Shown: positions 10,311-63,500 of the stretch, in pieces | How positions within the stretch are numbered: the first letter of the stretch is position 1 | Layout of the letters: each line of letters starts with the position of its first letter | Virus record (IMG/VR): IMGVR_UViG_3300030102_006934 | Location: 310,001-374,000 of that record | DNA: 64,000 nt | Direction: 5' to 3' (one strand) | Position numbers and translations under genes: made by a program | The notes under the pieces: model-generated | Told to the model about the DNA's origin: nothing | The model's input: only the letters and a program-made list of their open reading frames with translations | Databases searched by the model: none

Positions 10311-10315
10311 CTATT

Positions 10316-11132: not shown

Positions 11133-11149
11133 ATTAAAAAACAAAAAAA

Positions 11150-11615: not shown

Positions 11616-11678
11616 CAATAAAATTGTTTTTACTCACCACTATCACTTATTAACTATCTTACTATATTTATATTCGAT

Positions 11679-18533: not shown

Positions 18534-18731
18534 GTGAGTATCAAAAGAATCATAAAAGAAGAGGTGGATGAATTTGATTGGGTTAAAGATGTTAACCCAA
18601 GACTACCAATATCTAAAAAAGAAATATCTTTGATTAATGAAGTTATAAATTTCCTAATTGATAATGAACAGTATGGTGATGATTGGGGTGAACATATCGA
18701 TACACTTCAAAAAATAATAGACCAAGGTTAA
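18534..18731 (+). CDS. Small DFDW-tag protein
   Basis: IKRIIKEEVDEFDWVKD. Confidence 0.75.
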   Translation: MSIKRIIKEEVDEFDWVKDVNPRLPISKKEISLINEVINFLIDNEQYGDDWGEHIDTLQKIIDQG

Positions 18732-18733
18732 AA

Positions 18734-20182
18734 ATGAACATAAAAAGGGTTATACGAGAAGAGTTGAGTGACTTTGACTGGGTTGAAGAGATACCCAGTG
18801 TATTACCCAAAGATAGTGATTGGTGGATAATCAATGATGTTGATCCCTATAGTTTAGAGGTAAGTGAAGAAATACAAGATTTTGTATTTAAACAAGGTTT
18901 TACTTGGATGTCGGGTCGGAAAAATTTCGTACCCAACAAGGTCGTAGCAATCTCACATCGAGGTGGAACATATGATCAACAATTAGGTAGATTTGGTTTT
19001 TACCGTCCATCTGACCATTCACCAAGTGACATAGAAAGATATGAAACAGGGAAAGATGACCTAGTTTATCGATGGAGTGAAATCGTTAAACCAATTAAAG
19101 AATCGGATGATATGGATTGGATTAGAGATATAAAACCAACAGACCCAATCGGTGATTTCCTCATGAAAAAATTTCATGAGAAAATGGTTACTTATTTATC
19201 GTTGGGTGGTAGAAAAGGTGATGTTATTTCTAGGGAATGGGCTACCGTTGAAGCTTTTTTAATTGAATTAAGGGAATTAAAAGAGAATGGCTTTGTTAAT
19301 TTTTTAAGTAGGGTATTATTACAAAGTCATGTCGATAGACCTTACCCACATGTCTTAAAGGCTATAGAAGACTCAGGTTTTGACGTTAATAAGTCAGAAG
19401 AAACCAAAAGACTTTATAAAATATTTCAGTCTTATAACTCTTTGGGTAATAGAATAAAAAGGACTTTAAAAAAAACTTTCATAAGAGAGAATGACCTAGA
19501 TTGGATTGCTGGTGTTAGTAAAGACTATTGGGATTATTATGATGCTGTGGTTTTCAAAAAAACATTGTTTGATGCTGAATTTAAGAAGTTTATTAACCAA
19601 GCCCTAAAATCCGTACAACCAACCAACGCTTCAGATTGGGAAGAAGATGATGAGATGAGTGATTTAGAGTACTTAAATTATAGGATTAGAAGACATGGCC
19701 AAGCTTTTATCGGAAAATACAGAGATGAAAAAGGTCGGAATGTTTTAGTTTTTGGTCAGGACCCAGATTATGAACTATACCCCCAAGTAAAGGATGCTAA
19801 AACTATAAATTACGAAGATATAAAAAAGGGGTTGTTCGAATCCAACGACTTTAGTTGGATCCAAGATATAGAACCACCGGTATTTAAACAACTAGATATT
19901 GCCACAAAAGATGATAATGATATAAACGTAAAGTGGGGTGATAATGGGGATTTTAGTGAGGTGATAGATTCTAGTGGTCATAGGTATTTTAATCAAAGGG
20001 AATTAGGTTTATTTTTAGGTCTTTCTTATAGAAATTGGTCTGAAACTATTAATAATCTAGGGAAGTCAAATCTACTATTATATATAAAACACTTGATTGA
20101 TTCTATAGAGTGGAGTTTACCAAGAGAACAGGAAGATTATGATGATTTTATTAAATTATATAAAATAGTGGAAAAGTTATGA
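18734..20182 (+). CDS. Four-module DFDW-tag protein
   Basis: IREELSDFDW, IKESDDMDW, IRENDLDW, LFESNDFSW. Confidence 0.8.
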   Translation: MNIKRVIREELSDFDWVEEIPSVLPKDSDWWIINDVDPYSLEVSEEIQDFVFKQGFTWMSGRKNFVPNKVVAISHRGGTYDQQLGRFGFYRPSDHSPSDIERYETGKDDLVYRWSEIVKPIKESDDMDWIRDIKPTDPIGDFLMKKFHEKMVTYLSLGGRKGDVISREWATVEAFLIELRELKENGFVNFLSRVLLQSHVDRPYPHVLKAIEDSGFDVNKSEETKRLYKIFQSYNSLGNRIKRTLKKTFIRENDLDWIAGVSKDYWDYYDAVVFKKTLFDAEFKKFINQALKSVQPTNASDWEEDDEMSDLEYLNYRIRRHGQAFIGKYRDEKGRNVLVFGQDPDYELYPQVKDAKTINYEDIKKGLFESNDFSWIQDIEPPVFKQLDIATKDDNDINVKWGDNGDFSEVIDSSGHRYFNQRELGLFLGLSYRNWSETINNLGKSNLLLYIKHLIDSIEWSLPREQEDYDDFIKLYKIVEKL

Positions 20183-20725: not shown

Positions 20726-21751
20726 ATGAACATCAAAAGAATTATAAAAGAGGAGATGGATGACTTTGATTGGGTTAGAAATATAGAGGTTGATACTGAT
20801 TTAACCCCTGCTCAACTTTACAATAGAATTAATGATTTACCAAATGGTATAGTTGGCCCTTATGTCGGTGAAAACTTCGCTGATATTAAGTATGAGAATG
20901 GTAGGTACTATTTAATGGTTGATGATTTTTGTGATTTTAAAGAATGGTTTAGTGATAGAGAAAACGGTTCTCAAGGTTATTATATGAATCAATGGGCTTT
21001 TACACAAGCTTTTTGTGGAGAAGATGATTTTTTTGAACCTTATGGTGATTTGGTTTATGATTGGATTGACCAAGTATGGGAACTTGTTGCGGGGGATGAA
21101 AAATTATATAATTATGTAGTTGATTACATTACTGAAAACTTAGTTGGGGATGAGATGAGATTAGATAATGAGGAAAAAATATTAACTTTAGAAGATGTTC
21201 TTACTTGGTCAGCTGATTCAGATGTTTTAGGAATGGTTATAAATGAACTAGATGTTTTTGAGGATTTAAAATGGGAATTAGAGAGATCTTACGAAAATGC
21301 TTATAATACATTTGTTGTTGATAATATGTATAAAGCAGGTAGGGATGCTATCACAGATGTTGTGGGTGATGGTGAAAGAAAAGATGTAGAACTTTATAAT
21401 TCATACAGTAAATCCAATTACAACGCTAATAAATTAGTTTTTGACGTGACGAGTATGTTGTCAGATTATCTTTATGAGGCTATTGAGTATTGTATAGATA
21501 ATAGATGTAAACCTTATTGGAAACCAGAGAATTATGATTTTGAATCGGAGGGTGAGACGGAAGAAGAAGCTTTTGAAGATTTTTGTCATGAGTGTATGAA
21601 TTACCCCTTTGATGACCATGGGTCTTTCCTTTCTTTTATGAAAGAAATATTAGAAGAAAATGGGGACTTATTAAATCCTAGAGTCGATGATTACCCTAGT
21701 AACGATGAGATAGAAGATTATTTTATAGAAGACGTACATGGAAGATTCTAA
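20726..21751 (+). CDS. Acidic DFDW-tag protein
   Basis: IKRIIKEEMDDFDW; DLTPAQ...LLNPR domain shared with next gene. Confidence 0.8.
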   Translation: MNIKRIIKEEMDDFDWVRNIEVDTDLTPAQLYNRINDLPNGIVGPYVGENFADIKYENGRYYLMVDDFCDFKEWFSDRENGSQGYYMNQWAFTQAFCGEDDFFEPYGDLVYDWIDQVWELVAGDEKLYNYVVDYITENLVGDEMRLDNEEKILTLEDVLTWSADSDVLGMVINELDVFEDLKWELERSYENAYNTFVVDNMYKAGRDAITDVVGDGERKDVELYNSYSKSNYNANKLVFDVTSMLSDYLYEAIEYCIDNRCKPYWKPENYDFESEGETEEEAFEDFCHECMNYPFDDHGSFLSFMKEILEENGDLLNPRVDDYPSNDEIEDYFIEDVHGRF

Positions 21752-23102
21752 AAAAACAAATTTAAAATTAATTATACGAGAAGAGTTGGATGACTTTGAT
21801 TGGGTCAGAGACGTGAATACCAATCAAGATATCGCATTAGACATTGTTAATAAAACTAAATTTTTTGTGTTAGACGGTAGTTTAAGGGTAGACCTACCTT
21901 TTATGAGTTATTATGAAGGTTATCCAGTGAAACAGTTATTTAACTCCTCGTCATTACTTAAAAGTAATAGCCCTACTATTATGTTCCTTAATTACGTTAG
22001 CCAAAATCATGGGTTTGAAAGAACCGACTTCATGGCCAAATATAACATAAACGCAAATGTACGTGATATATGGTTTAGGTATAAAAATTTAATGACACAA
22101 AAAGTTTTAGACAACCTTAAAGATAAACCAATTAACGAATCAGATGACTTTGGTTGGGTTAGGGATATAAAGATTGATTATGATTTAACTCCTGCTCAGT
22201 TTTACCATAGGTATGAAGGTAATTTACCACTAAAATTTGTAGGACCACTAATAGATAATGGATTTATTGATATAGACTATGATGGAGATGAACTTTATTT
22301 AAAATTGGAAGACGGTTGGTGTGATTTAAAATCACTTTTTACGGAACATGATACCAGTTCTTCTCAAGGAGCATACATTAACAAAAGTTTAGTTAATAAT
22401 TTATATTGTGATGAGGATTACTTTGAACCATTCGATGGGATAGTTTATGATTGGGAAGATCAAGTTTGGGGCCTTATAACTCAAGATGATGAACTATATA
22501 AATACATAATAGACCATATAAACGAAAATATTGTGGGTTACCAAATGGATTTTGAGGGTGAACAAAGAACTCTAACTAAGGAAGATATTCTTGAATGGTC
22601 TGCCGACTCCGATGGGTTGGGTGAAGTCATCAATGACTTGAATGTTTTTGAGGATTTAAAATGGGAATTAGAACTTTCTTATGAAAATGCTTATAACAAT
22701 GTAATTAGAGATAATATTTACGAATCCGTTAGAAAAAGTGTTGAGGATTATCTTGGTCCGGCTGATTGGTATGGTAATGTTTTAACTTTTAAAGTAACTG
22801 AACCTCTTTTAGAACTTATAGGTAATGAAATTGGTGATTGTTGGGAAAACTGTAAACGACTTTGGGATCCAAAAGAATATGAAGATACTTATATGATGTT
22901 CAATAAAACCGAAGAAGAAGCTTTTGAGGAATACTGTGGTTCTTGTTTTGACCACCCATTTGATTCATATGGTTACTTTTTGGATTTCTTTAGTGAGTAC
23001 TTATCTGAAGAAGGGGAATTACTAAACCCAAGGCTTGATGAATTCGCGTCAGATGCTGAAATGTTACCATATTTTAAAGACGAGGTCTATTCTAGATTTT
23101 AA
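21738..23102 (+). CDS. Two-module DFDW-tag protein, paralog of 20726
   Basis: IREELDDFDW, INESDDFGW then DLTPAQ...VFEDLKWELE...LLNPR. Confidence 0.8.
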   Translation: MEDSKKTNLKLIIREELDDFDWVRDVNTNQDIALDIVNKTKFFVLDGSLRVDLPFMSYYEGYPVKQLFNSSSLLKSNSPTIMFLNYVSQNHGFERTDFMAKYNINANVRDIWFRYKNLMTQKVLDNLKDKPINESDDFGWVRDIKIDYDLTPAQFYHRYEGNLPLKFVGPLIDNGFIDIDYDGDELYLKLEDGWCDLKSLFTEHDTSSSQGAYINKSLVNNLYCDEDYFEPFDGIVYDWEDQVWGLITQDDELYKYIIDHINENIVGYQMDFEGEQRTLTKEDILEWSADSDGLGEVINDLNVFEDLKWELELSYENAYNNVIRDNIYESVRKSVEDYLGPADWYGNVLTFKVTEPLLELIGNEIGDCWENCKRLWDPKEYEDTYMMFNKTEEEAFEEYCGSCFDHPFDSYGYFLDFFSEYLSEEGELLNPRLDEFASDAEMLPYFKDEVYSRF

Positions 23103-35455: not shown

Positions 35456-36220
35456 ATGAAAAACTTAATCAAAAAAATATTAAAAGAAGATTTTAATCCT
35501 GAAGATTTTGAATGGGTTAGAGAGATAGACCCATTGAACACCTTCAAGGAGTGGGTAGAATCAACTAGTTTAATAAAAAAAAATAATCCTAGTGGAAAAA
35601 CTGATAGACAATGGTTGAACCACATAGAAAGGACTAAAAATTGGGTTGAAGATTTTACAGATGAAACACATACATTATTAGAATATGTAGAAAATTTAAA
35701 CAGTTCAGCTGGTTTAGAACACACAAAAGATATGCTTGGTGCGATACATGATTATATAGGCACTGAAGATGGAAATAGTGAAGGTTATTATGTTGGTACT
35801 TATAGAGAAGGGGAAAGATATTTATGGATGTTTTTAAAATATTTTAGTCCATACGGTGAAAAATATAATCTAACACTAAAAGAGTTATTAGACATATCAC
35901 ATAAGTATTTTGAAAGTCGTGTTGACGCTGATATAGAAAAGTCAGAGTCATTAAGAGAATATAATGAAATTGAAAAAAGAAGTACCACTGAAATCACAAT
36001 ATCTTTATTAAATGAGGCAGCTGACCATTTCGCTAAAGGTTTAAGGTTAATTGAATCGGCGACACAATTTGCTTATGACTCAAACAACGAAGATTTAATT
36101 AGAGATTTGGAAGAACTAAGGATATCAATTCAAAGTGGGAGTGATAAGATGTGGGTTGAAAACCCAAACAGTATGAATATTGTTAATCGTATTAATGATA
36201 TAATCACTAAATATAGTTAA
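35456..36220 (+). CDS. DFEW-tag protein
   Basis: LIKKILKEDFNPEDFEWVRE. Confidence 0.75.
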   Translation: MKNLIKKILKEDFNPEDFEWVREIDPLNTFKEWVESTSLIKKNNPSGKTDRQWLNHIERTKNWVEDFTDETHTLLEYVENLNSSAGLEHTKDMLGAIHDYIGTEDGNSEGYYVGTYREGERYLWMFLKYFSPYGEKYNLTLKELLDISHKYFESRVDADIEKSESLREYNEIEKRSTTEITISLLNEAADHFAKGLRLIESATQFAYDSNNEDLIRDLEELRISIQSGSDKMWVENPNSMNIVNRINDIITKYS

Positions 36221-36787
36221 ATGAGAAAGTTAATTAAAAAGATATTGGTGGAATCTGATTGGGATTGGATTGAAAATGTTAAGTACGTAACATTGGAGTG
36301 GGGTGAAATACCAAAGAAAGGTGAAAAACTGATTTGTGTAGATGGTTATATTAACACCGAAGAATTATCTTATTATATACAAGGTGCGGATGAAGATGTG
36401 TGTGATAAACTAAATGGGGGTCACGGATATTATCCAAAAAAAGAAATAATAGTAGAAAAAACTACTTTAGATGAGTGTACAAATGGTGGTAGTAGAGTCA
36501 TAGTTTGGCCAAGAGTAACCCGAAGAATGCGTAATGAAAATGGTATTATGGGTGATGCGTTAGCGAGAATATCGACTCAACATAAAACGATTAATGAGTC
36601 TTACTTCGACTCCAATAAACTTTACAATAAAAGTTACATAGACAGTGTTACCAAAAACGCTGATAGAAATATAAAACGAATTGTTAATAACCTAGAAGTG
36701 GTTAAATGTAAAGATAAAAATAATAACTCAACTGAGTGTGTTAGAATACCAGAAGTGGTATTTGTTTATATAAATGGTAGATATTAA
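36221..36787 (+). CDS. DWDW-tag protein
   Basis: LIKKILVESDWDWIEN; second module after INES. Confidence 0.75.
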   Translation: MRKLIKKILVESDWDWIENVKYVTLEWGEIPKKGEKLICVDGYINTEELSYYIQGADEDVCDKLNGGHGYYPKKEIIVEKTTLDECTNGGSRVIVWPRVTRRMRNENGIMGDALARISTQHKTINESYFDSNKLYNKSYIDSVTKNADRNIKRIVNNLEVVKCKDKNNNSTECVRIPEVVFVYINGRY

Positions 36788-36789
36788 AA

Positions 36790-37125
36790 ATGAAACATTT
36801 AATTAGAAAAATACTAAATGAAGGTGATTTTGATTGGGTAGAAGATTCAAAAAGTCCTAATATACCCTTAAAAGACATATCTGACTGGGTATATGAAACT
36901 AGATATAAAATTGCTCCAGTCATGCAAAGTATAGATGAATTCAAAAAACAAAACTTTATCAAAGGTGGGTCTAATAATTCGAATACCACTAATTCAGAAG
37001 TACTAGAAGACGTTTTATATTCTATCACACAAATAGGTACTGAAATAAGTAATATATATGATAGTCTTGAACAAATAGACGAAGAACTTCACTCATTAAG
37101 TTTTGTAATTGAAGATGATGAATAA
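36790..37125 (+). CDS. DFDW-tag protein
   Basis: LIRKILNEGDFDWVED. Confidence 0.75.
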   Translation: MKHLIRKILNEGDFDWVEDSKSPNIPLKDISDWVYETRYKIAPVMQSIDEFKKQNFIKGGSNNSNTTNSEVLEDVLYSITQIGTEISNIYDSLEQIDEELHSLSFVIEDDE

Positions 37126-41024: not shown

Positions 41025-41053
41025 CAATTTAAAAAAAGATTAACTCAATTAAA

Positions 41054-49190: not shown

Positions 49191-49233
49191 AATGGTTATA
49201 GTACATTACCACATTGGCTAATATTTATTAAGT

Positions 49234-52200
49234 GTGATGTCAATTAAAAAAATTTTAAAAGAGTATAATAATTTCGATTGGATTAATGATATAAATCCTA
49301 TTTCCCCACATATAGAAAATATTGTGGGTAAAAAACTACGTCATCGAGACAATAACTTAGCACATATACCCAACCACAACGATTTAAGTAAAATAAAAGA
49401 CGGTGGTGTTCTTTTATTAAAACCCAAGATGGATTATTATTTTGTTGTGGACCGTATAGACCGTATAACAAATGAGGTTATTATTAAAATATTCCCTAAA
49501 AGAAAATCTCGCTACAAACAAGAAGAAGTAAGATATTCAATTAGTGATATGGAGAATTTAATTCGGTTGGGTATATGGGTTCTTGATGATAGTATAGAAG
49601 AATCTGATAATACCATAGTAGAAGAAGAGGAAATAGGGCTAGACAATGATGAAAATATATCACAAGAAGAAATAGATTATATTAATAAAGAGTATGGTTC
49701 TTTAAGGGATAGGGAAAATATAAAAAACACATTGAAGAACCCACCTTTTAACTTCAATCCGTCCCAAATAAGAAATGGAAGTATCAACACTTATGTTGTG
49801 AGATATATAGTTTCTAAAGAAGGAAATAAAGGTAATAAAGATGTTTTTGTAAAAGAAAAATTTGAAAATTTTTTGGATAAAGTAAATAGTGTATTGGGCA
49901 CTAATTACAAAAACTCTAGTGGATATAGGGAATTGACATCATCAGCAAAACCCAAAAAACAAGGGGCTTTGACTCAACGACAAATATTGGTACACAACTT
50001 TAATATGAGTAAGGAAGCAATTGAAAGTTGGTTACAAGTAAAACAAAATAACCAAAGAGTTGTTGGACAAAAGAACCTAAGACAGCCAAAAACACAGGAA
50101 GAGATAGATACTAACCTTACTAAACTCATAGATTATTTAGCTAAAACTAAACTTAGTGAAATTATTTTATCATTAGATGGTTTACTAGAAAAGTTTGGGT
50201 TAAGTCGTGATGATAAAAGTAAAAATGACGCAATCCCCAAAAAAGATGAGATTGTTAAACAATTAATTGATGAATTTGAACAGAACTTAAGGGTGAAGTT
50301 TTATTTAAATTACATTGGTGGTAATGTTGTAGATCAAAGGTCTAACTGGGCAACATTTGTGAGGTATTCTAAAGCAATTAAAAAAATTATAGAAAACAGT
50401 GAACTACCAAAAGACCTCGGAATAGACTTTAAAAATAGTAAGAACTATAAAAGGTTAAAGGATTTATTTGAAAAAATAAAAGAAAAAGAATACTGTTACA
50501 TTTTTAGTGAAAACTGTGAATTATCCAGTTCTGATATAGAAAAAGTTATGGACTTTTTCGGTAAAAAATATGAAAATAGTTTTTTAACTAAAGGATTTAA
50601 AAAAGATACTAATAGGGGTCTTGAGTCTAGGATTCATAATTTAGATATGGTGGGGTATAACTTTTCTGAAAAAATAAAATCAAAAGATTTTAATGCGGAC
50701 GAAATTTATAATTATATAACTAAAAACATTAAAAATTATTTAGATAATACAGAAACTATTGTTAAGTATGATTTATTGGCTAAAGGGGAAAGAAAAGACA
50801 ATAAGGGTAATATTATAATACCCAACGAAGGTAAAGTTGAGGTAAAGGATATAAACTATTTAGATAGTTACTTATCAGAATTTTTAGCATCTCCAGTCAA
50901 AAGAGCGGAATATGGGGTGAAAGATGACCCTAAATATTTAAAAAGGTATAATGAAGTGGTTGATAGGGTTTATACCTATTTAACAGAAAATTATAAAGAA
51001 ATCATTATTAGTAAAATTCAAGAAGGTTTAGAAGGTATAATAATATCTAATAATATCTATGTCCCTAATAAAAAAAATAACATTAAATTTTATTTATCCG
51101 ATATTGGTCGAAGTAACCCCAAAAAACAAAGAAGAATTACTGTTAGATACGAGATTAATGAAAGTAACTGGGAAAATTTTTATATAATAGATGATAATGG
51201 TGTGTTACAACCACTAGATGAAGACACCAAAAAAGTGTTAAGATATAAAGGTGAAAAAATTTCTGAATCTAACGACATTGATTGGATAAAAGATGCTTAT
51301 AAAACAGAATGGACTTTTGATGATATCGCACAATTATATTATGCTGGTGACGTTGAAGCTGTTAAAATTGTTAGGTTTAAAGATTTAAAACACTTAAGGG
51401 GAGCTATTGAGTGGTGTCTTGGTGAGGATGCGGAGTTAGATTTTTTCAATGAATTCAAGGTCGGTAATATACGCCAGATACTTTCTACCAATTTAGACAT
51501 TGACGGCCAAATATCACACAATAATTTTACAGTGAGTGATTTAGATTGTGGTTGGTGTCTAGATGACCCAGATTCCATTGGTTATAATTGTAATGAAAGA
51601 CCTAAAACCATGTCTCTACGGGTTGATGGTCAAATATTCGAAGACTCTTTTGCCTTCAGTGAGGATTGGGTTGAGTTAGAACCTATTATGAAATCAGATG
51701 AAATAAATGAATCTTCTGAGGGGTTAGAATGGATTAGGGATGTGGTACCTGACGACAGTGTAAGATTTGATAAAGATAAATTATATTACTTTAACCCACC
51801 ACTAAACCATGATGAGATAATAAATTTAATGAATAGAATACCCAATGAAAGTAAGTATACACAAACCAAAAAATGGTTTGATAGGGTTTTTGGGGGTAGA
51901 GCACCACAGAGGTATATGACTTATTTTAATGTAGATGGTGGTGATCGAAATGATGGTAAATTTTATGTTAGTGGTTGGTGTAGTGAAACTCGTTGGTCTC
52001 AGGTTAATGATGAGTATTATCCACACTCTGAACCAGTAAATGGTAGGGATGAATTTTTTGGACACTATAAAATTTCAGAAGAAAAGGTAAGTGAATCTAA
52101 AGACGATTTTGATTGGGCGAGGGACGTTAATCCAAATCCTTTTCACGGTACAAACATTAAATTCTATATAAACGCTACACCAACTCAAGAACAAGCTGAA

Positions 52201-53970
52201 AAGATTTGGGATTTATTAATTGATGCGGGTGTAACTGATTCGGCTAAAGTTAAAGAATACAACAGGGTGTATAAGTTGATGAGGGGTAGAGGTACATTTA
52301 TGATGATTGACCACGATGGTGACTTTATGTATAATATTGATAACTTATCTGAGTACGTTAGAAATGGAAGAATTAGTTCTGGTAATATTATTAATTTTAC
52401 AGACATTTTTTCAGATGATGAACCTGATGATTATATAAAAGAATCTAAAGATTTTGAATGGTTAGATGATGTACCACTAACTCTTAACCATATTTTTAAT
52501 GAGTTAAGTATTGGTGATGAGTTAACCCTAAAGGGCAATACTTATGGTGCTCATCTAAATATGCAACATTTTAAATACACAGAACCTTTTACAATTACGA
52601 TACAATCAATCGGACCTAGATTAGAAGATTCTGATTTTAAAATATCAGTTAGAGAAAAGGAAGCTATAGTTAACTTAGGTATAAAACATAAGGGTGAACT
52701 ACTTAAAAAGTACCCAAAATTTCATGTGTTTTCAAATAATTCGTTTTTTCCAGAGGATGGCGATTTAGAAGTTGTTTCTTGGGTTAAATCTGAAGATAAA
52801 TTAGAAGAGTCCTCACAAGATTGGGATTGGGCCGAAACTCCAGAAGTAATCATAGGGGGTAAAAACGGTTTACCAAAAGAAAGTGTTCCTTTAGGTACTA
52901 AAGTGGTGAATTATGATGGTGACATATTCACCATAGAGGATATTACTGGAGGGTATATGGATTTCCAACATGTATGGGGTAGTGACCAAAAGACAGCTTG
53001 GTTGGGTCCTAAAGATGATGAGGATAATAAAAATTGGCATAATACCTTATGGTTAAGAAAAGCAACTTCTGAAGATTTAAATGAATCTGAAAATGAGTGG
53101 GACTGGGCAAAGAATATAGTTACTGATGGTTTAGATCTTAAGTTTAGTGAAGGGATGTGTTTACTTAGGAAAGACGGTACTCGATGGTTGGTAGTGGATA
53201 CACCGAAACACGCTTCAAAATCCACAACATTAGTTTGGCTTCAACGAACTCACACAAATGGGATAGATATAACTGAAAAAAAGAGGCCAATCTCACCCTT
53301 TAGAGAATCAACTCTTTCTAGGCAAATACAAAGTGGTGATATAACAATCTGTAATAAACCTTTAAAGGAATCCGATGACTTTGATTGGGTTGATGATATT
53401 GATGCTGTAGACCCTAAAAAACCTAAGCCTGGTTATGTTTATAATTGGAGTGGTTATAGTGATATAATTGATGATGATGAGGTGCTAACCGATACCATAA
53501 TTATTACAAAAATAAAGGGTGATGACGAATGGGTTAGTGGGGGTTTTGAAATTATGTTTGTTCCAGAAGGTACTTCTCCCAATTCCGAAGATGCGGTTCA
53601 TAAACAAGTTTTTGATAAATTAGTTGATAAGGGTGAAATTCAATTTCTTCACAAATTAGATACTGATATGGTTAATGAATCTAAAGATGATTTTGATTGG
53701 GTTAGAGATACAATACCTGTTGAACTAGAAGACCCTCAATCTTGGGTCGGTAGGTCCTTTGGTTATGGTCCTGAAATAGTAGATAACATGGATGGAGCGG
53801 AACTAGCAATGGGTGATGATAAGGAATATTATACTATAGATAGTATTGATGGAAATGGTAATTTAGCTTTAACGAGGCACCACCCCAATAGAAGAAGCAT
53901 GAGTGATAGTAGTACTTCAGTTATTTCTTTAAGAGATTATATTAGTAATGGTAGATGGGTATGGGTTTAA
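49234..53970 (+). CDS. 1578-aa modular polyprotein-like protein with nine DFDW-type tags
   Basis: Tags at N-terminus and ~51259, 51703, 52087, 52435, 52801, 53077, 53362, 53671; contains a KYDL...VEVKD domain shared with 60915. Confidence 0.85.
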   Translation: MMSIKKILKEYNNFDWINDINPISPHIENIVGKKLRHRDNNLAHIPNHNDLSKIKDGGVLLLKPKMDYYFVVDRIDRITNEVIIKIFPKRKSRYKQEEVRYSISDMENLIRLGIWVLDDSIEESDNTIVEEEEIGLDNDENISQEEIDYINKEYGSLRDRENIKNTLKNPPFNFNPSQIRNGSINTYVVRYIVSKEGNKGNKDVFVKEKFENFLDKVNSVLGTNYKNSSGYRELTSSAKPKKQGALTQRQILVHNFNMSKEAIESWLQVKQNNQRVVGQKNLRQPKTQEEIDTNLTKLIDYLAKTKLSEIILSLDGLLEKFGLSRDDKSKNDAIPKKDEIVKQLIDEFEQNLRVKFYLNYIGGNVVDQRSNWATFVRYSKAIKKIIENSELPKDLGIDFKNSKNYKRLKDLFEKIKEKEYCYIFSENCELSSSDIEKVMDFFGKKYENSFLTKGFKKDTNRGLESRIHNLDMVGYNFSEKIKSKDFNADEIYNYITKNIKNYLDNTETIVKYDLLAKGERKDNKGNIIIPNEGKVEVKDINYLDSYLSEFLASPVKRAEYGVKDDPKYLKRYNEVVDRVYTYLTENYKEIIISKIQEGLEGIIISNNIYVPNKKNNIKFYLSDIGRSNPKKQRRITVRYEINESNWENFYIIDDNGVLQPLDEDTKKVLRYKGEKISESNDIDWIKDAYKTEWTFDDIAQLYYAGDVEAVKIVRFKDLKHLRGAIEWCLGEDAELDFFNEFKVGNIRQILSTNLDIDGQISHNNFTVSDLDCGWCLDDPDSIGYNCNERPKTMSLRVDGQIFEDSFAFSEDWVELEPIMKSDEINESSEGLEWIRDVVPDDSVRFDKDKLYYFNPPLNHDEIINLMNRIPNESKYTQTKKWFDRVFGGRAPQRYMTYFNVDGGDRNDGKFYVSGWCSETRWSQVNDEYYPHSEPVNGRDEFFGHYKISEEKVSESKDDFDWARDVNPNPFHGTNIKFYINATPTQEQAEKIWDLLIDAGVTDSAKVKEYNRVYKLMRGRGTFMMIDHDGDFMYNIDNLSEYVRNGRISSGNIINFTDIFSDDEPDDYIKESKDFEWLDDVPLTLNHIFNELSIGDELTLKGNTYGAHLNMQHFKYTEPFTITIQSIGPRLEDSDFKISVREKEAIVNLGIKHKGELLKKYPKFHVFSNNSFFPEDGDLEVVSWVKSEDKLEESSQDWDWAETPEVIIGGKNGLPKESVPLGTKVVNYDGDIFTIEDITGGYMDFQHVWGSDQKTAWLGPKDDEDNKNWHNTLWLRKATSEDLNESENEWDWAKNIVTDGLDLKFSEGMCLLRKDGTRWLVVDTPKHASKSTTLVWLQRTHTNGIDITEKKRPISPFRESTLSRQIQSGDITICNKPLKESDDFDWVDDIDAVDPKKPKPGYVYNWSGYSDIIDDDEVLTDTIIITKIKGDDEWVSGGFEIMFVPEGTSPNSEDAVHKQVFDKLVDKGEIQFLHKLDTDMVNESKDDFDWVRDTIPVELEDPQSWVGRSFGYGPEIVDNMDGAELAMGDDKEYYTIDSIDGNGNLALTRHHPNRRSMSDSSTSVISLRDYISNGRWVWV

Positions 53971-54187: not shown

Positions 54188-55231
54188 ATGGATTCAGAAA
54201 AAAAAGAAGGTAAAGTTTCAAACGATTTTGATTGGGTAAAAGATGTTAAAGCAAGACTACCTTTAAGAGTTGGTACTTGTTTAACTTTTAAACACTCAAA
54301 AGAGGAAGAAGAATGGGTAGAAGATGAATACGGTAACATGATTGACCACGGTAAAATGAACTGGCATATCACAAGTAAGTTTATAGATGTGTATAATGAC
54401 GATAAACCAACCTTTTCAATGGTAGCCACAGATAGAATGGGTGAAAGTCGTCAAATTTTTATGGAAGTGGAAAAGGTTAAAGAATTGTATGAGGAAGGTG
54501 TTTATGAGCCTTGTAAAAAACAGCCATACCTAAAAAGAGTAATGAAAGAAGAATCCGATGATTTTGATTGGGTTGAGGATGTTTCCAACACTTTACCCAG
54601 AAATGATAATTGGATGTTAATTAACGATGTAGACCCTGATTCTTTGGAAGTGTCTAAAGATATACAAAATTACCTATTCAGTAAGGGTTTGTTTTGGAAT
54701 ACAGGTAGAAAAACCCCATTGTATCAACGTATATTAGCGATACACTATGTCTTACCACACCGAATACATAGTGGTAGCTTTACCTACGTACCTAATAGTA
54801 TACCTCATGAAAAAGCAAGATTAGAAGTTGAGTATGATAGGGAAGAACTTCTCAAAAAAGGAAAACATGTTTACTATTGGAGTCAATTAAAACCAGAAAA
54901 AGATAATATCAAAGAATCAAAAGATTTAAAATGGATCGAAGATATTGATTTTACAGACCCTAAAAAACCCAAACGTGGTTATGTTTATGATTGGAAGGGT
55001 TATAGTGATAGTGTTGCTAATTTAGGATATCAGTTAGGTGAAATTGGGGATATTATAATTATTAAAGAACCATTTAGCAACCCAAGTCATAGGTACCCCA
55101 AGTGGAAGATGCATTACTTCGATACTTTAAATTTTGATTGGGGTGAAGAATTAGATGGTATTTCTGAAATTGAATTCAATAGAAAAATAGATGACGGTAC
55201 CATAACCTACCTATACAAGTTAGGTCAATAA
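54188..55231 (+). CDS. Three-module DFDW-tag protein
   Basis: SNDFDW, MKEESDDFDW, IKESKDLKW. Confidence 0.8.
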   Translation: MDSEKKEGKVSNDFDWVKDVKARLPLRVGTCLTFKHSKEEEEWVEDEYGNMIDHGKMNWHITSKFIDVYNDDKPTFSMVATDRMGESRQIFMEVEKVKELYEEGVYEPCKKQPYLKRVMKEESDDFDWVEDVSNTLPRNDNWMLINDVDPDSLEVSKDIQNYLFSKGLFWNTGRKTPLYQRILAIHYVLPHRIHSGSFTYVPNSIPHEKARLEVEYDREELLKKGKHVYYWSQLKPEKDNIKESKDLKWIEDIDFTDPKKPKRGYVYDWKGYSDSVANLGYQLGEIGDIIIIKEPFSNPSHRYPKWKMHYFDTLNFDWGEELDGISEIEFNRKIDDGTITYLYKLGQ

Positions 55232-59116: not shown

Positions 59117-60403
59117 ATGAACTTAAAAACCATCATTAAGTCAGAACTATTATTTGAATCTTTGGAAGATAGGTTAAAATCTGCCTATCGAAAATGGTGT
59201 AAAAAAATGAAATTAAAAGACCAAGACACCCTTGATGATATTAAGAATGCTGATGGTTATGTAGAAGAACTTGATGTATATGCAGAAGAATTTGAGGACC
59301 CTCACAGTAAAATGTACCAAAAAGTTGAAGAACTATACGCCAAGGAAGATTATGAAGGTATACATAATTTGATAGCTGACCACCAATGTAGGGATTTGTA
59401 TATTGGTGCAGTATTTAAAGATTGGCTTTCTTATAGGAACCTAACAAAAAGTTCAGATATATTCCAATATAAAAGTGAGAGAGAACTTGCGGGGGAGTTA
59501 GAGGACGCAAAAGAGAAATCATTTACCAAAAAGTTAAAGAAAGCTTCAGAGGGTGAAGATTTTGATAAAATTTGGGAGAATGATGATATGTTGATTGTTG
59601 TCCCTAAGTCACACGTTGGAGCTTGTAAATTTGGTCAGGGTACTAAATGGTGTACCGCTAGTAAAACTGGTAATTACTTTGATCCTTATTATAAAAAAGG
59701 TATCTTATATAGGGTACTACAAAAAAATGATAATTATAAAGAATTGTTCTCTAATTTTCAGATGAATAATAAGTTAGTCTCTGACATTGAAAACCTAAGT
59801 AAAGTCTCCATAAATCTAAGAAGAAAACAAGACTCTATGTCTATGGTGGATAAAGTAGATTATGCTTTTGGAAATAAATCAACTTTAGAGTTTTTAAACT
59901 CCTTACCTAGTGAAGGTTATAAAGCCATTAAAAATTACCATAGTTTAAACGAACAAAGTATAAAAAATATTATAAGAGAAGAGTTGGATGACTTTGATTG
60001 GGTTAAAAATACTAACCCAATTCCAAATGAAATTTTAGACATAAGTAAGTACCGAGATGGGAATTATAAATTTTGGTTGGGAGATATATCAAAAGAAACT
60101 CAACTACAAATATTGGATTATATAAGTGAGGTGATTAGGGGTGACGATAATTTACATACCAATGGTACATTGTATGAAGTTCGTAAAAGGGTGGATAAAA
60201 ATTTAGTCTCTATTAATTCACTTTTTTTTGAGATTAAACAGGTTGGCTTAAAAAAAGGAATAAATTTATCAATAATGGGTTGGTACCCAAATGACCCACA
60301 TTTTGAAAGAGAAGAAAGATTAGAATATTGTAGAAATTATTTTTATCAAACGGATGATATAAATTTGTCTGATGTAGATTTGGGGGAACAAAATAAAATT
60401 TGA
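59117..60403 (+). CDS. FGQGTKWC-family protein fused to a C-terminal DFDW-tag module
   Basis: GACKFGQGTKWCTAS; internal IKNIIREELDDFDW. Confidence 0.75.
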   Translation: MNLKTIIKSELLFESLEDRLKSAYRKWCKKMKLKDQDTLDDIKNADGYVEELDVYAEEFEDPHSKMYQKVEELYAKEDYEGIHNLIADHQCRDLYIGAVFKDWLSYRNLTKSSDIFQYKSERELAGELEDAKEKSFTKKLKKASEGEDFDKIWENDDMLIVVPKSHVGACKFGQGTKWCTASKTGNYFDPYYKKGILYRVLQKNDNYKELFSNFQMNNKLVSDIENLSKVSINLRRKQDSMSMVDKVDYAFGNKSTLEFLNSLPSEGYKAIKNYHSLNEQSIKNIIREELDDFDWVKNTNPIPNEILDISKYRDGNYKFWLGDISKETQLQILDYISEVIRGDDNLHTNGTLYEVRKRVDKNLVSINSLFFEIKQVGLKKGINLSIMGWYPNDPHFEREERLEYCRNYFYQTDDINLSDVDLGEQNKI

Positions 60404-60526: not shown

Positions 60527-60907
60527 ATGAAGAAAATAATAAAAAGAATTTTAAGAGAAGAATTCAATGATTTTGATTGGATTAAGGACACTGGTGGTGA
60601 TAAATATGTCCCTATAAGAGTTATTCTCAATAAGCTTGATGAGACTTATTATGGGGAAAATCCTAATGAAATTCTAGAATACGAAAATGTTTTCAAAGTA
60701 CCATTAGAAGATTTTGTGAGAATTACAAATAGTACGAATTATACAGACGAGGAATATGAGATTATTACCCCAATAGGTCATAATTTACTTAATTATGCTT
60801 ATGATTGTGAACTTAATCCATTTGTTTGTAAAGAAATTGATGATTTTTTCGATACGGAGGTTGACGAATATATTGAGGGTATAGTATTATTGGATGATAA
60901 TTTTTAA
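60527..60907 (+). CDS. DFDW-tag protein
   Basis: IIKRILREEFNDFDWIKD. Confidence 0.75.
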   Translation: MKKIIKRILREEFNDFDWIKDTGGDKYVPIRVILNKLDETYYGENPNEILEYENVFKVPLEDFVRITNSTNYTDEEYEIITPIGHNLLNYAYDCELNPFVCKEIDDFFDTEVDEYIEGIVLLDDNF

Positions 60908-60914: not shown

Positions 60915-63500
60915 ATGAGAGTTTTAATAAATAAAATATTAAAAGAGTTACATAGTAAAAGTATTATTAAAAAAGTACTTAATGAAAATTACCAGGACGA
61001 AAATATATCACAAGAAGAAAAAAATAGTATCATTGATGAGTATGGGTGGTTAAAAAATGAAGAAAAAATTGAAAGTATTTTAAAAAACCCGCCTTTTTCA
61101 AAGAAAACTAGGACCTATAGAATAGTTAATAGCTATAGGGTTAGGTATATTATATCTAAGGAAATAAAAAAAAATGTATATTTTAATAACGCGGGTTGGG
61201 CTAACTTTGTAAAGAAGGTGGGTCAAGTAATAGGCTTAAAAATAAAAGCAACAGATGATACCGTTTCAAAATTCTTTAAAAATATCGATGAGACCAAAAA
61301 ATATGGTTTAGAGGGGAAACATTTAGAAGATAGAAAAAATACTTCCACGGAGTTAAAAAAGAATTGGAATAAAATAGACCCTGAAGTATACGAAGAAAGA
61401 ATAGAACATACTATTAATTATTTAAAAAATACCAATATTACAGAATTGGAAAATTCAAAGACAAGCTTATTGACACGGTTTTCTTTAATACTAAGATACC
61501 AAGAAGAAATAATGAACTATCTTATTGATTATTTTAAAGATGACCCAAAAATAAGGTTTTATCTTAGTTATCTTAATAAAGGTGGAAAATATTGGGGTAC
61601 ACTTGTAAAATACCAAAAAAAACTAAGTAATGTGCTAGACAACCCTAATATTAGTGAAAAATATGATGACATTGTAGAAATGAAAAAATCATATAAGGCT
61701 ATTATTGAAGAAGAAGCACCTTATTTGTTTAACGAAAAGGGTAATTTTACTAAAAAAGAAAAGGAAATATTAGTAAATTGGTTTAATTTAACAAGTTATG
61801 AACATTCTTTCACAGAATTAGGGTTTTATAAACCAGAAGGAAAAGGTGCGGAGTCTTTAATACATAATCTACACAGTGCAGGTATTAGATACAATGTTAG
61901 TAATGAAATAAAAAATAATACTGATACTGATGACGTTGTAAAATTTGTGATAAACAATATTATTAATTATTTAAAAAACACAAAAGATATAATTAAATAC
62001 GATATTGTTAGTAAAGATACTATAAAAGATATTAATGGAAATGAAGTGATTCCAAAGGGTAGTAAAATAGAGGTTAAAGACATTAAGAATAGTGATAGTT
62101 ATTTTGCTGAATTTTTATCATCACCTGTTAAAAGCGGTTCAGAAATATTGAATAATGAAGTTTATAGAGGAAGGTATAATAAAATAATAGAAGGAATTTA
62201 TAATTGGTTATCTAACGATAGTGTGGGTATGGGTATTAAAAATACTATTAAGTGGTTAATGACTAACGATTTAGAAGGTATAATAATATCTAATAATATC
62301 TATGTCCCTAATAAAGATGGTAACATTGAATTTTATTTATCTAATATTGGTCAAAACAACCCAAAAAATCATATAAGAATTACAATAAGATATAATATTA
62401 ATTTAGATAAATCGAAAAATTTCTATAAAATAGGAGATGGTAAGTGGAAATTAAACGGTAAAGCATCCAAAAAAGGTATTCTTTACCCACTACCAGAAAC
62501 AGAAAGTAATTTAATAAGACCCATAGAGAAACAAATTTATAAAACAATAGAAGAATCTAAGACTAAATCTACAATAAATAAAATATTAAAAGAAGAATTC
62601 GATGATTTCGATTGGATTAAGGACACTTTTACCGAACTAAACAAAAGTGAAAAATGGATGTTGGTTAATGATATAGACCGTGAGAGTATATCGGAAGGTC
62701 ATGAAATACAAAAATATCTATTTGACTTGGGTTATAGTTGGGGTACTGGTGATTTAAAAAATTCACTAAAAGATTTTTGTATCTATACAATATATCATTT
62801 CGGAAATATTAGAAATGATGAACACTTATATTACGGAGATGGTTGTAGAAGTGCTGATATAAGAATTTCAGATAAAGATATTAAAAGTGGTGAACATATA
62901 GTTTATTATTGGAGTGAGTTAAAACCTAAAACAATAAAGGAAGAAAACGATTTTAAATGGATTGATGAACCAAGAAACAACCCATTAGATGGTTTAAGAT
63001 TAACAACACCTATGGGTAGAGCTGGTAGTGGTGGTAGTGGTTTAACAATAAAAGACGATGGTGGTACATATGTTACTGTTACCTCTTCTAACGGTTCTAG
63101 TGAATATCATAGGGGTACTGTTAAAAACTTTATAAGAATGGGTATTTGGTTACCAATAGATTCTATGAATGAATCAGATGATTTTGATTGGGCGAAAGAA
63201 ATAAAACCAACGTTGAATGTTGCCTTTGAAGAAGGTCTGATTAAAGCGGGTGATATTTTGACACTTTCTGGGGAACTAATGGATGATGAAGGAAGACACA
63301 CAATACAAGTTTCAGATTTTAAAATAAAAATAGATCAAATATATGGGCCTAATAGTGTATATAGAGACATCACCAGTTCTCTTTTCATACCACTACAAGA
63401 AAAATATTTCAAACACTTAGGTTATTATGAAAATGAATTTAATGATTCTATCAGATTTGCTAAGAAAGATGGTGAGTTAGAAATATTAGATATATCTTAA
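60915..63500 (+). CDS. Four-module DFDW-tag protein
   Basis: INKILKE repeated; LKEEFDDFDW, IKEENDFKW, MNESDDFDW; large domain paralogous to 49234. Confidence 0.85.
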   Translation: MRVLINKILKELHSKSIIKKVLNENYQDENISQEEKNSIIDEYGWLKNEEKIESILKNPPFSKKTRTYRIVNSYRVRYIISKEIKKNVYFNNAGWANFVKKVGQVIGLKIKATDDTVSKFFKNIDETKKYGLEGKHLEDRKNTSTELKKNWNKIDPEVYEERIEHTINYLKNTNITELENSKTSLLTRFSLILRYQEEIMNYLIDYFKDDPKIRFYLSYLNKGGKYWGTLVKYQKKLSNVLDNPNISEKYDDIVEMKKSYKAIIEEEAPYLFNEKGNFTKKEKEILVNWFNLTSYEHSFTELGFYKPEGKGAESLIHNLHSAGIRYNVSNEIKNNTDTDDVVKFVINNIINYLKNTKDIIKYDIVSKDTIKDINGNEVIPKGSKIEVKDIKNSDSYFAEFLSSPVKSGSEILNNEVYRGRYNKIIEGIYNWLSNDSVGMGIKNTIKWLMTNDLEGIIISNNIYVPNKDGNIEFYLSNIGQNNPKNHIRITIRYNINLDKSKNFYKIGDGKWKLNGKASKKGILYPLPETESNLIRPIEKQIYKTIEESKTKSTINKILKEEFDDFDWIKDTFTELNKSEKWMLVNDIDRESISEGHEIQKYLFDLGYSWGTGDLKNSLKDFCIYTIYHFGNIRNDEHLYYGDGCRSADIRISDKDIKSGEHIVYYWSELKPKTIKEENDFKWIDEPRNNPLDGLRLTTPMGRAGSGGSGLTIKDDGGTYVTVTSSNGSSEYHRGTVKNFIRMGIWLPIDSMNESDDFDWAKEIKPTLNVAFEEGLIKAGDILTLSGELMDDEGRHTIQVSDFKIKIDQIYGPNSVYRDITSSLFIPLQEKYFKHLGYYENEFNDSIRFAKKDGELEILDIS

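What the first reader, a model, noticed from the sequence alone, without database searches (positions are those of the whole stretch)
49234..53970. 1578-aa polyprotein divided by a repeated [ILV]-x-E-S-x(1-2)-[DE]-[FW]-[DE]-W tag
Seen: ISE|SNDIDW, INE|SSEGLEW, VSE|SKDDFDW, IKE|SKDFEW, LEE|SSQDWDW, LNE|SENEWDW, LKE|SDDFDW, VNE|SKDDFDW separate mutually dissimilar ~90-150 aa modules. The same tag follows the N-terminal IKKILKE. Established: T4 prohead protease gp21 cleaves after Glu in (I/L)-x-E. Inference: the protein is packaged in the prohead and cut into ~10 small proteins, each with a new acidic-aromatic N-terminus (SDDFDWV). That N-terminus could be an ejection, docking or host-targeting signal, making this an array of injected effectors.
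Basis: partly seen in the sequence, partly recalled or inferred. Interest (0 to 1): 0.85.

Follow-up and report, generated by a model that had tools for sequence, protein, structure and literature searches.

The report
Tagged module arrays in a huge phage
A 1577-residue protein of an uncultured 380-kb phage is a string of small, independently occurring domains, each preceded by the same short peptide; that peptide contains a T4-type head-protease cutting site and marks dozens of other proteins in a clade of T4-like phages, so it probably labels proteins that are loaded into the phage head and cut apart, which no experiment has yet tested.

Summary
The ORF (ATG 49237, stop 53970) carries the tag once at its N-terminus and eight times internally. 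The full signature is [IL]-[NK]-E-S, then 0-2 residues, then D-D-F-D-W-[VI]-x-D. At N-termini it is preceded by a 10-residue leader, M-N-[IL]-K-R-I-I-K-E-E.

- **Spread:** the window holds 29 copies in 13 ORFs. Seventy of the 78 related proteins retrieved also carry the tag. All of these come from metagenomes; none of 50,697 deposited phage genomes matched.
- **Modules:** they occur alone, fused and in different orders. Whole modules are gained exactly at tags.
- **Structure:** AlphaFold models two modules as compact small beta-barrels. The well-aligned tag itself stays unstructured, so it behaves as a conserved linear motif, not as part of the fold.
- **Head link:** tag-bearing relatives encode a T4 gp21-family prohead protease and a gp23 capsid protein. 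The predicted maturation site of that capsid protein (L-I-N-E|T) is of the same class as the tag. In four contigs, tagged genes lie directly beside the capsid or protease genes.

The capsid-targeting and cleavage reading is therefore the best-supported one, at a confidence of about 0.5. Packaging, cleavage and the role of the DFDW box are inferred only, and this genome's own protease was not retrieved.

The parts
49221..49230 (+). ATATTTATTA promoter-like motif just upstream of the start codon
   Evidence: There are 11 exact copies in the window against 2.35 +/- 1.6 expected. The motif precedes six tagged genes here. In related loci it also precedes tagged genes and the prohead protease gene.
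49237..53970 (+). Tagged multi-module protein (1577 aa from the ATG; an alternative GTG lies at 49234)
   Evidence: The homologues P0001 (90% identity) and P0002 (83%) start at the same Met.
49237..49302 (+). N-terminal leader (M-S-I-K-K-I-L-K-E) plus the first DFDW-type box (Y-N-N-F-D-W-I-N-D)
   Evidence: 27.2 bits.
49264..49590 (+). N-terminal module (aa 10-118). It is homologous to the last module of the tagged protein encoded after the capsid gene in L072 and L077.
   Evidence: 32% identity, E 1e-8.
49594..49605 (+). Degenerate junction I-E-E-S (aa 120-123). It lacks a DFDW box and lies at the boundary between the module and the large domain.
   Evidence: The homologous junction in ORF 60915-63500 carries a full tag.
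49606..51252 (+). Large basic domain (aa 124-672) with no tag and no family match. It is also found in ORF 60915-63500 and in P0006-P0008.
   Evidence: The AlphaFold model is weak (pLDDT 65) and has no fold match. pI is 8.5-9.2.
51259..51297 (+). Tag 2 (I-S-E-S-N-D-I-D-W-I-K-D), aa 675-687
51703..51744 (+). Tag 3 (I-N-E-S-S-E-G-L-E-W-I-R-D), aa 823-836
52087..52128 (+). Tag 4 (V-S-E-S-K-D-D-F-D-W-A-R-D), aa 951-964
   Evidence: P0002 has a whole extra module inserted at this junction.
52435..52473 (+). Tag 5 (I-K-E-S-K-D-F-E-W-L-D-D), aa 1067-1079
52801..52842 (+). Tag 6 (L-E-E-S-S-Q-D-W-D-W-A-E-T), aa 1189-1202
   Evidence: pLDDT is below 50 in the model, whereas the following module is above 90.
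52831..53082 (+). Module aa 1199-1282: a compact small beta-barrel (SH3/KOW/Tudor-like)
   Evidence: AlphaFold pLDDT is about 90. VIA Z is 5-6 to KOW/Tudor domains. Relatives such as P0013 and P0018 carry this module after an N-terminal leader.
53077..53118 (+). Tag 7 (L-N-E-S-E-N-E-W-D-W-A-K-N), aa 1281-1294
53362..53400 (+). Tag 8 (L-K-E-S-D-D-F-D-W-V-D-D), aa 1376-1388
   Evidence: The following module is paralogous to the third module of ORF 54188-55231.
53671..53712 (+). Tag 9 (V-N-E-S-K-D-D-F-D-W-V-R-D), aa 1479-1492
   Evidence: pLDDT is below 50 through D1491 even though 22 or more homologues are aligned there.
53710..53967 (+). Last module (aa 1492-1577), a compact alpha+beta domain. 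Free-standing homologues of 103-106 aa exist, and one of them is encoded directly after the capsid gene in L159.
3561..5915 (+). Tagged protein (2 tags)
18534..18733 (+). Small single-module tagged ORF (GTG start)
   Evidence: 35.3 bits, the best copy.
18734..20182 (+). Tagged protein (3 tags)
20726..21751 (+). Tagged protein (leader, tag and a 320-aa module of family B)
   Evidence: A homologue with the same leader is in L039.
21738..23102 (+). Tagged protein (2 tags; the second module is family B)
35456..37125 (+). Three consecutive single-tag genes (35456-36220, 36221-36787, 36790-37125)
54188..55231 (+). Tagged protein (3 tags), downstream of the large ORF after the small ORF 53977-54186
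59117..60403 (+). Protein with a leader-only N-terminus and one internal full leader plus tag
60527..60907 (+). Single-module tagged protein
60915..63500 (+). Paralogue of the large ORF: the large domain comes first, followed by three tagged modules

Best explanation
The protein belongs to a large, undescribed family of 'leader-and-tag' proteins in a clade of AT-rich, uncultured T4-like phages that probably infect Bacteroidota. Each unit is a short linear signature followed by an independently folding module.

**Proposed mechanism**
1. The N-terminal 10-residue amphipathic leader works like the T4 capsid-targeting sequence and brings the protein into the prohead core (inferred).
2. The gp21-family prohead protease cuts after the Glu of every [IL]-x-E|S. 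This removes the leader and separates the chain into a 113-aa module, a 555-aa basic domain and eight acidic modules of 92-148 aa (inferred).
3. Each product keeps the invariant D-D-F-D-W-[VI]-x-D box at its new N-terminus. This box is a disordered strand-forming docking motif that acts on each module separately, for example by holding it to a head component or presenting it for exit with the DNA (speculative).

**Shown**
- The signature exists and is conserved at the peptide level.
- The modules are independent and are shuffled at the tags.
- The tag is not part of the modelled folds.
- Tag-bearing relatives have gp21/gp23-type head genes and the same class of cleavage site, and their tagged genes lie next to those head genes.
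For: **Signature and significance:**

**Family breadth:** Nearly all of them start with the leader. The tag also appears in other IMG/VR contigs.

**Modularity**
- Paralogous modules occur in different proteins.
- Free-standing single-module genes exist.
- A whole module is inserted exactly between tags in an 83%-identical orthologue, and the module order differs in P0004.

**Structure:** two modules have pLDDT above 90, while the tag residues are below 50 despite a deep alignment.

**Protease link**
- L071 encodes Peptidase_S77 (E 2.5e-28) and Gp23 (E 2.2e-68), with a tagged gene between the protease/core genes and the scaffold-like gene, and another after the capsid gene.
- Tagged genes also follow the capsid gene in L072, L077 and L159.
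- The capsid proteins of the clade carry [LI]-[LI]-[NTS]-E|[TSA] at the position of the T4 gp23 maturation site.
- The scaffold-like p517 is enriched in [LI]-x-E (15 against 8.1 +/- 2.5), including LSES, LKES and IKES.
- Published rules: T4 gp21 cuts after L/I-X-E and the targeting sequence is 10 residues long (PMC9026906). SPN3US gp245 prefers Ser at P1' (PMC10052503).

**Direct link to this ORF:** its N-terminal and last modules are homologous to modules encoded next to the capsid gene in relatives.

**Shared regulation:** the promoter-like motif is shared by tagged genes and the protease gene.

**T4-like head in this genome:** a window ORF mimics the capsid propeptide, which suggests a T4-like head.

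**Weak lead:** the language-model neighbours of a single-module homologue include an 'IpIV internal head protein' cluster at score 0.69.
Against: - No experiment of any kind exists, and no cultured phage carries the tag.
- The capsid and protease genes of the 380-kb contig were not retrieved. Two scans returned only the 80 best of about 598 or more relatives.
- The most conserved residues (DFDWVxD) lie on the primed side of the proposed cut, where gp21-type proteases are not known to need anything. The capsid site has no such box. So cleavage does not explain the strongest part of the signal.
- In the window, and in the one other multi-module context examined (P0033), the tagged genes sit among accessory genes (tRNAs, nucleotide metabolism, homing endonucleases) and not among structural genes.
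- Thirteen tagged proteins in 64 kb is a large number of internal head proteins.
- [IL]-x-E-S is not depleted inside modules (31 observed against 26 expected).
- Only 2 of about 100 loci around related capsid genes carry tags.
Confidence: 0.5

Rival explanations
1. The tag is a docking motif with no proteolysis. It would be a short linear motif that binds one common partner by strand addition. The partner could be a phage or host hub protein, a chaperone, or a capsid surface. Multi-tag proteins would then be multivalent adaptors or decoration fibres that stay intact, in the way the T4 Hoc protein does.
For: - The DFDWVxD core is the most conserved part of the tag.
- It is predicted to be disordered next to folded domains.
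- It alternates acidic and aromatic residues, as strand-forming binding motifs do.
- The modules are small beta-barrels strung like beads.
- Genes placed just after the capsid gene often encode decoration proteins (established knowledge; the placement here is).
Against: This does not explain why [IL]-x-E-S is kept at a fixed distance in 92% of internal tags, with the I/L, E and S preferences of the gp21/gp245 protease class. It also does not explain the 10-residue N-terminal leader ending in I-x-E.
Confidence: 0.2
2. The tag is a structural linker. It would simply be the conserved inter-domain linker and N-terminal cap of a diverged repeat family. It would be kept by common descent and by frequent recombination between repeats, and would have no function in trans.
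For: - All tagged modules could descend from one ancestral unit. At least two are small beta-barrels, and several end in a similar h-x-x-h-I-x-x-G-x-W motif.
- Module gain and loss occurs exactly at tags.
Against: - The tag stays nearly invariant while the module bodies have diverged beyond recognition.
- It is not packed against the module in the model, despite a deep alignment.
- It heads unrelated large domains, such as the 320-aa family B.
- Synonymous sites vary, so selection on the peptide, not recombination, maintains it.
Confidence: 0.15
3. The tag is cut by another protease or serves another sorting route. It would be recognised by a different enzyme or pathway, for example the PrsW-like protease encoded in the window, a host Glu-specific protease, or an export or compartment-targeting system. 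The proteins would then act in the infected cell and not in the virion.
For: - The window encodes a PrsW-family protease and a secreted M43 peptidase.
- In the window and around P0033, tagged genes lie among accessory genes.
Against: - Nothing specifically links those proteases to the tag.
- The site class matches the head protease and the capsid and scaffold sites of the same clade.
- Tagged genes are embedded in the head-gene cluster in L071.
Confidence: 0.1
4. The repeat is a DNA-level signal. It would be conserved as DNA, as a recombination or homing site that drives module shuffling, and the peptide conservation would be a by-product.
For: - Modules are shuffled exactly at tags.
- Homing endonuclease genes are common in these genomes and lie beside tagged genes.
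Against: Codon third positions and Ser/Arg codon families differ freely among copies. The amino-acid pattern is kept across proteins that share less than 50% identity.
Confidence: 0.05

Closest known systems
T4 internal proteins (IPI, IPII, IPIII) with their capsid-targeting sequence, processed by the prohead protease gp21
   Same: - Both have a 10-residue N-terminal leader ending in I-x-E.
- Both are attached to small, fast-evolving, mutually unrelated proteins in T4-like phages.
- The protease family (Peptidase_S77) and the Gp23 capsid protein are present in tag-bearing relatives.
- The cleavage class is L/I-x-E.
- Internal-protein genes are hypervariable among relatives.
(PMC9026906.)
   Different: - The leader sequence is unrelated to the T4 one.
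- A second, invariant acidic-aromatic box follows the predicted cut and would stay on the mature protein.
- The signature is repeated inside long chains, giving up to nine units per protein.
- The modules are mostly acidic, whereas the T4 internal proteins are basic.
- There is no experimental evidence of packaging.
Propeptide-bearing ejection and inner-body proteins of giant phages (phiKZ gp175 substrates, SPN3US gp245 substrates)
   Same: - The host is a giant phage.
- Many head proteins are cut after Glu at a three-residue motif.
- Ser is preferred at P1'.
- Some substrates are cut at several sites.
(PMC10052503; PMC9026906.)
   Different: - Their motif is A/S/G-x-E, not I/L-x-E.
- Their cuts remove N-terminal propeptides; they do not separate a chain into many folded modules.
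- They have no DFDW-type box.
- No sequence or Pfam relationship was found.
Polyvalent proteins of phages and conjugative elements (Iyer et al. 2017, PMC5512222)
   Same: They are long polypeptides that join 2-15 unrelated domains. They are predicted to travel with the DNA into the host and sometimes to be cut into parts.
   Different: - Polyvalent proteins are defined by known conflict domains (zincin-like peptidase, ADP-ribosyltransferase, ParB, methylases and others) and often by an embedded peptidase. None of these was detected here.
- They have no repeated junction signature.
Multi-core precursor peptides and viral polyproteins with repeated recognition sites
   Same: A repeated short recognition sequence flanks each unit of a precursor that is cut into several products (established knowledge).
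   Different: The units here are folded domains of 90-550 aa in a DNA phage. The presumed protease acts in trans inside a capsid. Nothing is shared at the sequence level.

Membership tests
T4-type capsid-targeted internal head proteins (CTS plus gp21 processing) | Encoded by a phage with a gp21-family (Peptidase_S77) prohead protease and a gp23-type capsid | tested here: inconclusive
   Met in the tag-bearing relative L071 (Pfam S77 at 2.5e-28, Gp23 at 2.2e-68). The gp23 capsid gene was also found in L072, L077 and L159. The genes of the 380-kb contig itself were not retrieved. The only indirect signs are shared genes and a capsid-propeptide mimic.
T4-type capsid-targeted internal head proteins (CTS plus gp21 processing) | An N-terminal leader of about 10 residues ending in L/I-x-E | tested here: met
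   This ORF has M-S-I-K-K-I-L-K-E. Of the N-terminal tags, 55 of 61 have [ILVM]-x-E.
T4-type capsid-targeted internal head proteins (CTS plus gp21 processing) | Sequence similarity to the T4 CTS or to known internal-protein families | tested here: not met
   There is no Pfam or PHROG hit and no tblastn hit in 50,697 phage records. The only sign is a weak language-model neighbour at 0.69.
T4-type capsid-targeted internal head proteins (CTS plus gp21 processing) | Present in the virion, cut after the Glu, and released into the host | not testable with these tools
   This needs virion proteomics and a cultured phage.
Polyvalent proteins (PMC5512222) | Several known conflict-related domains (zincin-like peptidase, ART, ParB, MuF and others) in one chain | tested here: not met
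   Pfam finds nothing in this ORF. In 66 relatives it finds only one GNAT, one HTH_8 and one T9SS tail.
Polyvalent proteins (PMC5512222) | Many unrelated domains in one polypeptide of a phage | tested here: met
   The chain holds ten units. They include a 550-aa domain and eight modules that show no mutual similarity once the tag is masked.
phiKZ/SPN3US-type processed head proteins | A/S/G-x-E cleavage motif | tested here: not met
   P3 is I, L, V or M in all 123 scored internal tags.
Hoc-like capsid decoration proteins | Tandem Ig-like domains with a capsid-binding terminal domain | tested here: inconclusive
   The two modelled modules are SH3/Tudor-like, not Ig-like. The other modules were not modelled with confidence. 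Capsid binding cannot be tested here.

The most novel reading that the evidence does not exclude
The leader-and-tag signature would be a previously unrecognised, sequence-readable address system of a whole clade of T4-like phages of Bacteroidota.
- The leader loads cargo into the prohead.
- The head protease cuts long cassette proteins into single modules.
- The DFDW box left on every new N-terminus is a second signal that governs retention in the head or exit through the portal.

Recombination at the tags would then give these phages a combinatorial, rapidly reshuffled set of injected proteins. The whole injected proteome could be predicted from sequence alone.
Probability: 0.25. Interest if true: 0.85.

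Novelty: new variant of a known kind. Interest (0 to 1): 0.65.

Why it matters
If the reading holds, one short peptide identifies the internal or injected proteome of a whole group of abundant uncultured phages. At present none of their tagged proteins matches a known family.

It would extend the T4 capsid-targeting idea in two ways. Tandem cassettes would be cut into many products, and a conserved signal would stay on the mature proteins.

It would also give a simple handle for loading foreign proteins into such capsids. Finally, it would offer a clear example of domain shuffling at a defined peptide junction.

Even if cleavage is wrong, a 20-residue motif conserved across more than 70 protein clusters, while the attached domains diverge freely, points to a strong and unknown interaction.

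Tried and rejected
- **Family searches on the ORF:** Pfam and PHROGs found nothing usable.
- **Deposited phage genomes:** DNA and protein BLAST of the ORF, of two other tagged proteins and of a 30-aa leader-plus-tag found no match.
- **Literature:** no relevant paper contains the motif strings; the six papers that hold one of them are unrelated. One such chance match is a human autophagy LIR-type sequence, which has the same acidic F-x-x-V form. I treated this as coincidence because the genome is clearly a phage.
- **Large domain:** ESM Atlas search and AlphaFold plus Foldseek gave a poor model and no match.
- **Modules:** Foldseek and VIA searches found only generic small-barrel similarity (KOW, Tudor, and the TraI translocation-signal domain at Z about 5). 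That is too weak for a functional call.
- **Four-module alignments:** two alignments were discarded because MAFFT stacked different module families on top of each other. The alignment used (A5) was checked row by row. The two middle modules had essentially no homologues in it and were not modelled.
- **Head genes of the 380-kb contig:** two capsid-protein scans returned only the 80 best of about 598 or more relatives and did not include this contig. A motif-based DNA scan was abandoned because the conserved capsid motif is shared by hundreds of AT-rich contigs.
- **T4 late promoter:** TATAAATA is not enriched.
- **RNA structure at the start of the ORF:** none found.
- **DNA-repeat explanation:** rejected on codon variation.

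Full report
**The observation**

The ORF at 49234-53970 on the + strand is real. It most likely starts at the ATG at 49237, as its two close homologues do. The protein has only ten [ILVM]-x-E-[ST] sites. Eight are the tags. One (I-E-E-S at residue 120) lies at the junction between the N-terminal module and a large central domain. One (I-N-E-S at 640) lies inside that domain.

**The tag is genome-wide**

A regular-expression scan and then a profile built from the copies show that the tag is not special to this ORF. The window holds 29 copies scoring 6.9 bits or more. All are on the coding strand of 13 real ORFs, and noise begins at 4.3 bits. Codon third positions and Ser/Arg codon families vary among copies, so the peptide is under selection and the DNA is not a repeat.

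- The core D-D-F-D-W-[VI]-x-D-[VIT] is almost invariant, often with Pro three residues later.
- Upstream lies [IL]-[NK]-E-S.
- When the signature is at an N-terminus it is preceded by a stereotyped 10-residue leader, M-N-[IL]-K-R-I-I-K-E-E.

**What the genome is**

The window is positions 310,001-374,000 of IMGVR_UViG_3300030102_006934, a 380,343-bp viral contig with 30% G+C. The window carries eight tRNA genes and accessory genes. These include Mom-like proteins, HNH endonucleases, a tRNA nucleotidyltransferase, thymidine kinase, a PrsW-like protease, and an M43 peptidase with a type IX secretion tail. The last of these points to a Bacteroidota host. No structural gene was recognised in the window.

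**The family**

A search of 1.84 billion representative proteins with residues 670-1577 found 72 clusters at E below 1e-3. Other IMG/VR contigs of 24-210 kb carry the same N-termini. A second cluster of tagged genes lies at 111-123 kb of the same genome (L017).

No deposited phage genome has the tag. No relevant paper contains the motif; the six papers that hold one of the strings are unrelated. Pfam recognises almost nothing in 66 tagged proteins.

**Modularity**

With the tag masked, the modules of this protein do not resemble each other, but they have paralogues in neighbouring tagged proteins.
- The central 550-aa basic domain recurs in ORF 60915-63500. It also recurs in proteins that have no tag at all (P0007, P0008).
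- Several modules exist elsewhere as free-standing genes of about 105 aa with just the leader and tag in front (P0021, P0031, P0037, P0059, P0068).
- An orthologue with 83% identity has one whole extra module, with its own tag, inserted exactly at a tag junction.
- Another relative has the same modules in a different order.

The modules are therefore independent units that are gained, lost and shuffled at the tags.

**Structure**

An AlphaFold model of residues 1186-1577 used an alignment whose row placement I checked. It gave pLDDT above 90 for the first and last modules. The two middle modules had no usable homologues and were not modelled.

The tag residues have pLDDT below 50, including the whole V-N-E-S-K-D-D-F-D-W-V-R-D stretch before the last module. 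At least 22 homologues are aligned there. The tag therefore behaves as a conserved disordered linear motif and not as a strand of the fold. One caveat is that packing against the preceding module could not be judged. However, N-terminal tags have no preceding module.

The modelled modules are small barrels of the SH3/KOW/Tudor kind, with only generic matches. Most modules are acidic and the central domain is basic. The model of the central domain was poor and had no fold match.

**Link to head assembly**

The 108-kb contig behind L071 carries tagged genes. It also encodes a Peptidase_S77 protein, which is the T4 gp21 family, and a Gp23 capsid protein. On the coding strand its gene order is:
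1. protease
2. a 179-aa protein with L-N-E-A sites
3. a tagged 128-aa gene
4. a 517-aa highly acidic scaffold-like protein
5. the capsid gene
6. a homing endonuclease
7. another tagged gene

Tagged genes also follow the capsid gene in L072, L077 and L159. The one in L159 is a free-standing homologue of this ORF's last module. The one in L072 and L077 ends in a homologue of this ORF's first module.

All capsid proteins of the clade carry [LI]-[LI]-[NTS]-E followed by T, S or A, a few residues before the conserved mature N-terminal region. This is where T4 gp23 is cut. The scaffold-like protein is enriched in [LI]-x-E, including L-S-E-S, L-K-E-S and I-K-E-S.

Published work states that gp21 cuts after L/I-X-E and that the first ten residues of IPIII are the capsid-targeting sequence. 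It also states that internal-protein genes vary greatly among T4 relatives (PMC9026906). The related SPN3US protease prefers Ser at P1' (PMC10052503).

In 133 internal tags, 92% have [ILVM]-x-E five to eight residues before the Trp, against 9.5% of control windows. P3 is I or L in 83%, P2 is N or K in 72%, and P1' is Ser in 85%.

A promoter-like motif, ATATTTATTA, lies just upstream of the start codon of this ORF and of other tagged genes here and in relatives. It also precedes the L071 protease gene.

**Whether this genome has the same head**

Not shown. Two scans for the capsid gene were capped and did not return this contig. There are two indirect signs. The window shares many genes with tag-bearing contigs and with loci flanking related capsid genes. 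ORF 39549-40172 has an N-terminus that resembles the capsid propeptide and N-arm. The nearest cultured capsid proteins are about 42% identical (Microcystis phage Mel-JY01 and Flavobacterium phage 'immuto'). The Rak2-like jumbo phages are at 33%.

**Interpretation**

The best reading is a variant of the T4 system. A leader loads the protein into the prohead core. The gp21-type protease then removes the leader and cuts the chain at every [IL]-x-E|S. The predicted products are the 9-residue leader and fragments of 113, 555, 148, 128, 116, 122, 92, 95, 103 and 96 residues.

What this does not explain is the strongest signal, the DFDW box. It lies after the cut and is absent from the capsid site. 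It must have its own role on each mature module, most simply as a strand-forming docking motif. I cannot tell whether it holds modules in the head, presents them for exit, or acts in the host.

The rivals are ranked and costed in their own section: docking without cleavage, a structural linker, another protease or sorting route, and a DNA-level signal. My confidence in the capsid-targeting and cleavage model is about 0.5. My confidence that the tag delimits independent, shuffled modules and is a functional peptide motif is about 0.9.

**Novelty**

The principle is known from T4: a capsid-targeting leader plus prohead-protease processing of variable internal proteins. The new elements are the signature itself, its repetition inside long cassette proteins, the conserved post-cleavage box, and a family of more than 70 protein clusters. 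I therefore rate this as a new variant of a known kind.

Noticed in passing
window 3529, 11526, 16389, 18522, 20714, 49221, 58411, 59105, 60515 (+); 28430, 48220 (-): The exact motif ATATTTATTA occurs 11 times against 2.35 +/- 1.6 expected. Most copies lie 2-9 nt before a start codon or before tRNA-Ala. In related loci the motif precedes tagged genes and the prohead protease gene. It may be the promoter of one temporal class that gives nearly leaderless transcripts.
   Followed up: partly
window 39549-40172 (+): The N-terminus of this 207-aa ORF resembles the propeptide and N-arm of the T4-like capsid protein of relatives (E 8e-7 in the window scan, 9e-8 pairwise), including the W-x-S-x-G-x-L-E-G-L and P-I-x-R-R motifs. 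It may be a capsid-propeptide mimic, which would be a second route into the prohead. A homologue lies in L008.
   Followed up: partly
window 56959-58185 (+): This ORF encodes an M43 metallopeptidase with a type IX secretion C-terminal sorting domain, which points to a Bacteroidota host. A 53%-identical homologue lies beside the capsid gene of a 158-kb contig from the same sample (L085).
   Followed up: partly
window 7985-11616 and 40953-41025: There are eight tRNA genes (Glu, Asp, Ser, Met, Leu, Arg, Ala, Gly), seven of them in one cluster.
   Followed up: no
window 20179-20709, 59117-60403, 60915-63500 (N-termini); L071:8711-9184: The 10-residue leader (M-x-L-K-K-I-I-K-E-E type) also occurs without the DFDW box, for example on a SprT-like protein. 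So the leader and the box are separable elements.
   Followed up: partly
L071:7015-8565 (-): A scaffold-like 517-aa protein lies between the tagged gene and the capsid gene. It is extremely acidic, has about nine tandem copies of M-D-E-D-Y, and is enriched in [LI]-x-E sites.
   Followed up: partly
L071:3298-5010 (-), L072:12185-13903 (-): A large homing endonuclease gene sits between the capsid gene and the following tagged gene in two contigs.
   Followed up: no
window 448-1230 and one further ORF of alignment A1: Two Mom-like DNA-modification proteins, a PrsW-family protease, a GH16 glycosidase and sugar-nucleotide enzymes lie among the accessory genes. The exact ORFs of the last three were not resolved, because the scan reports only family counts.
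   Followed up: no
window 49237-53967, residues 640-648: I-N-E-S-N-W-E-N-F, near the end of the large domain, looks like a decayed tag inside a conserved domain.
   Followed up: no
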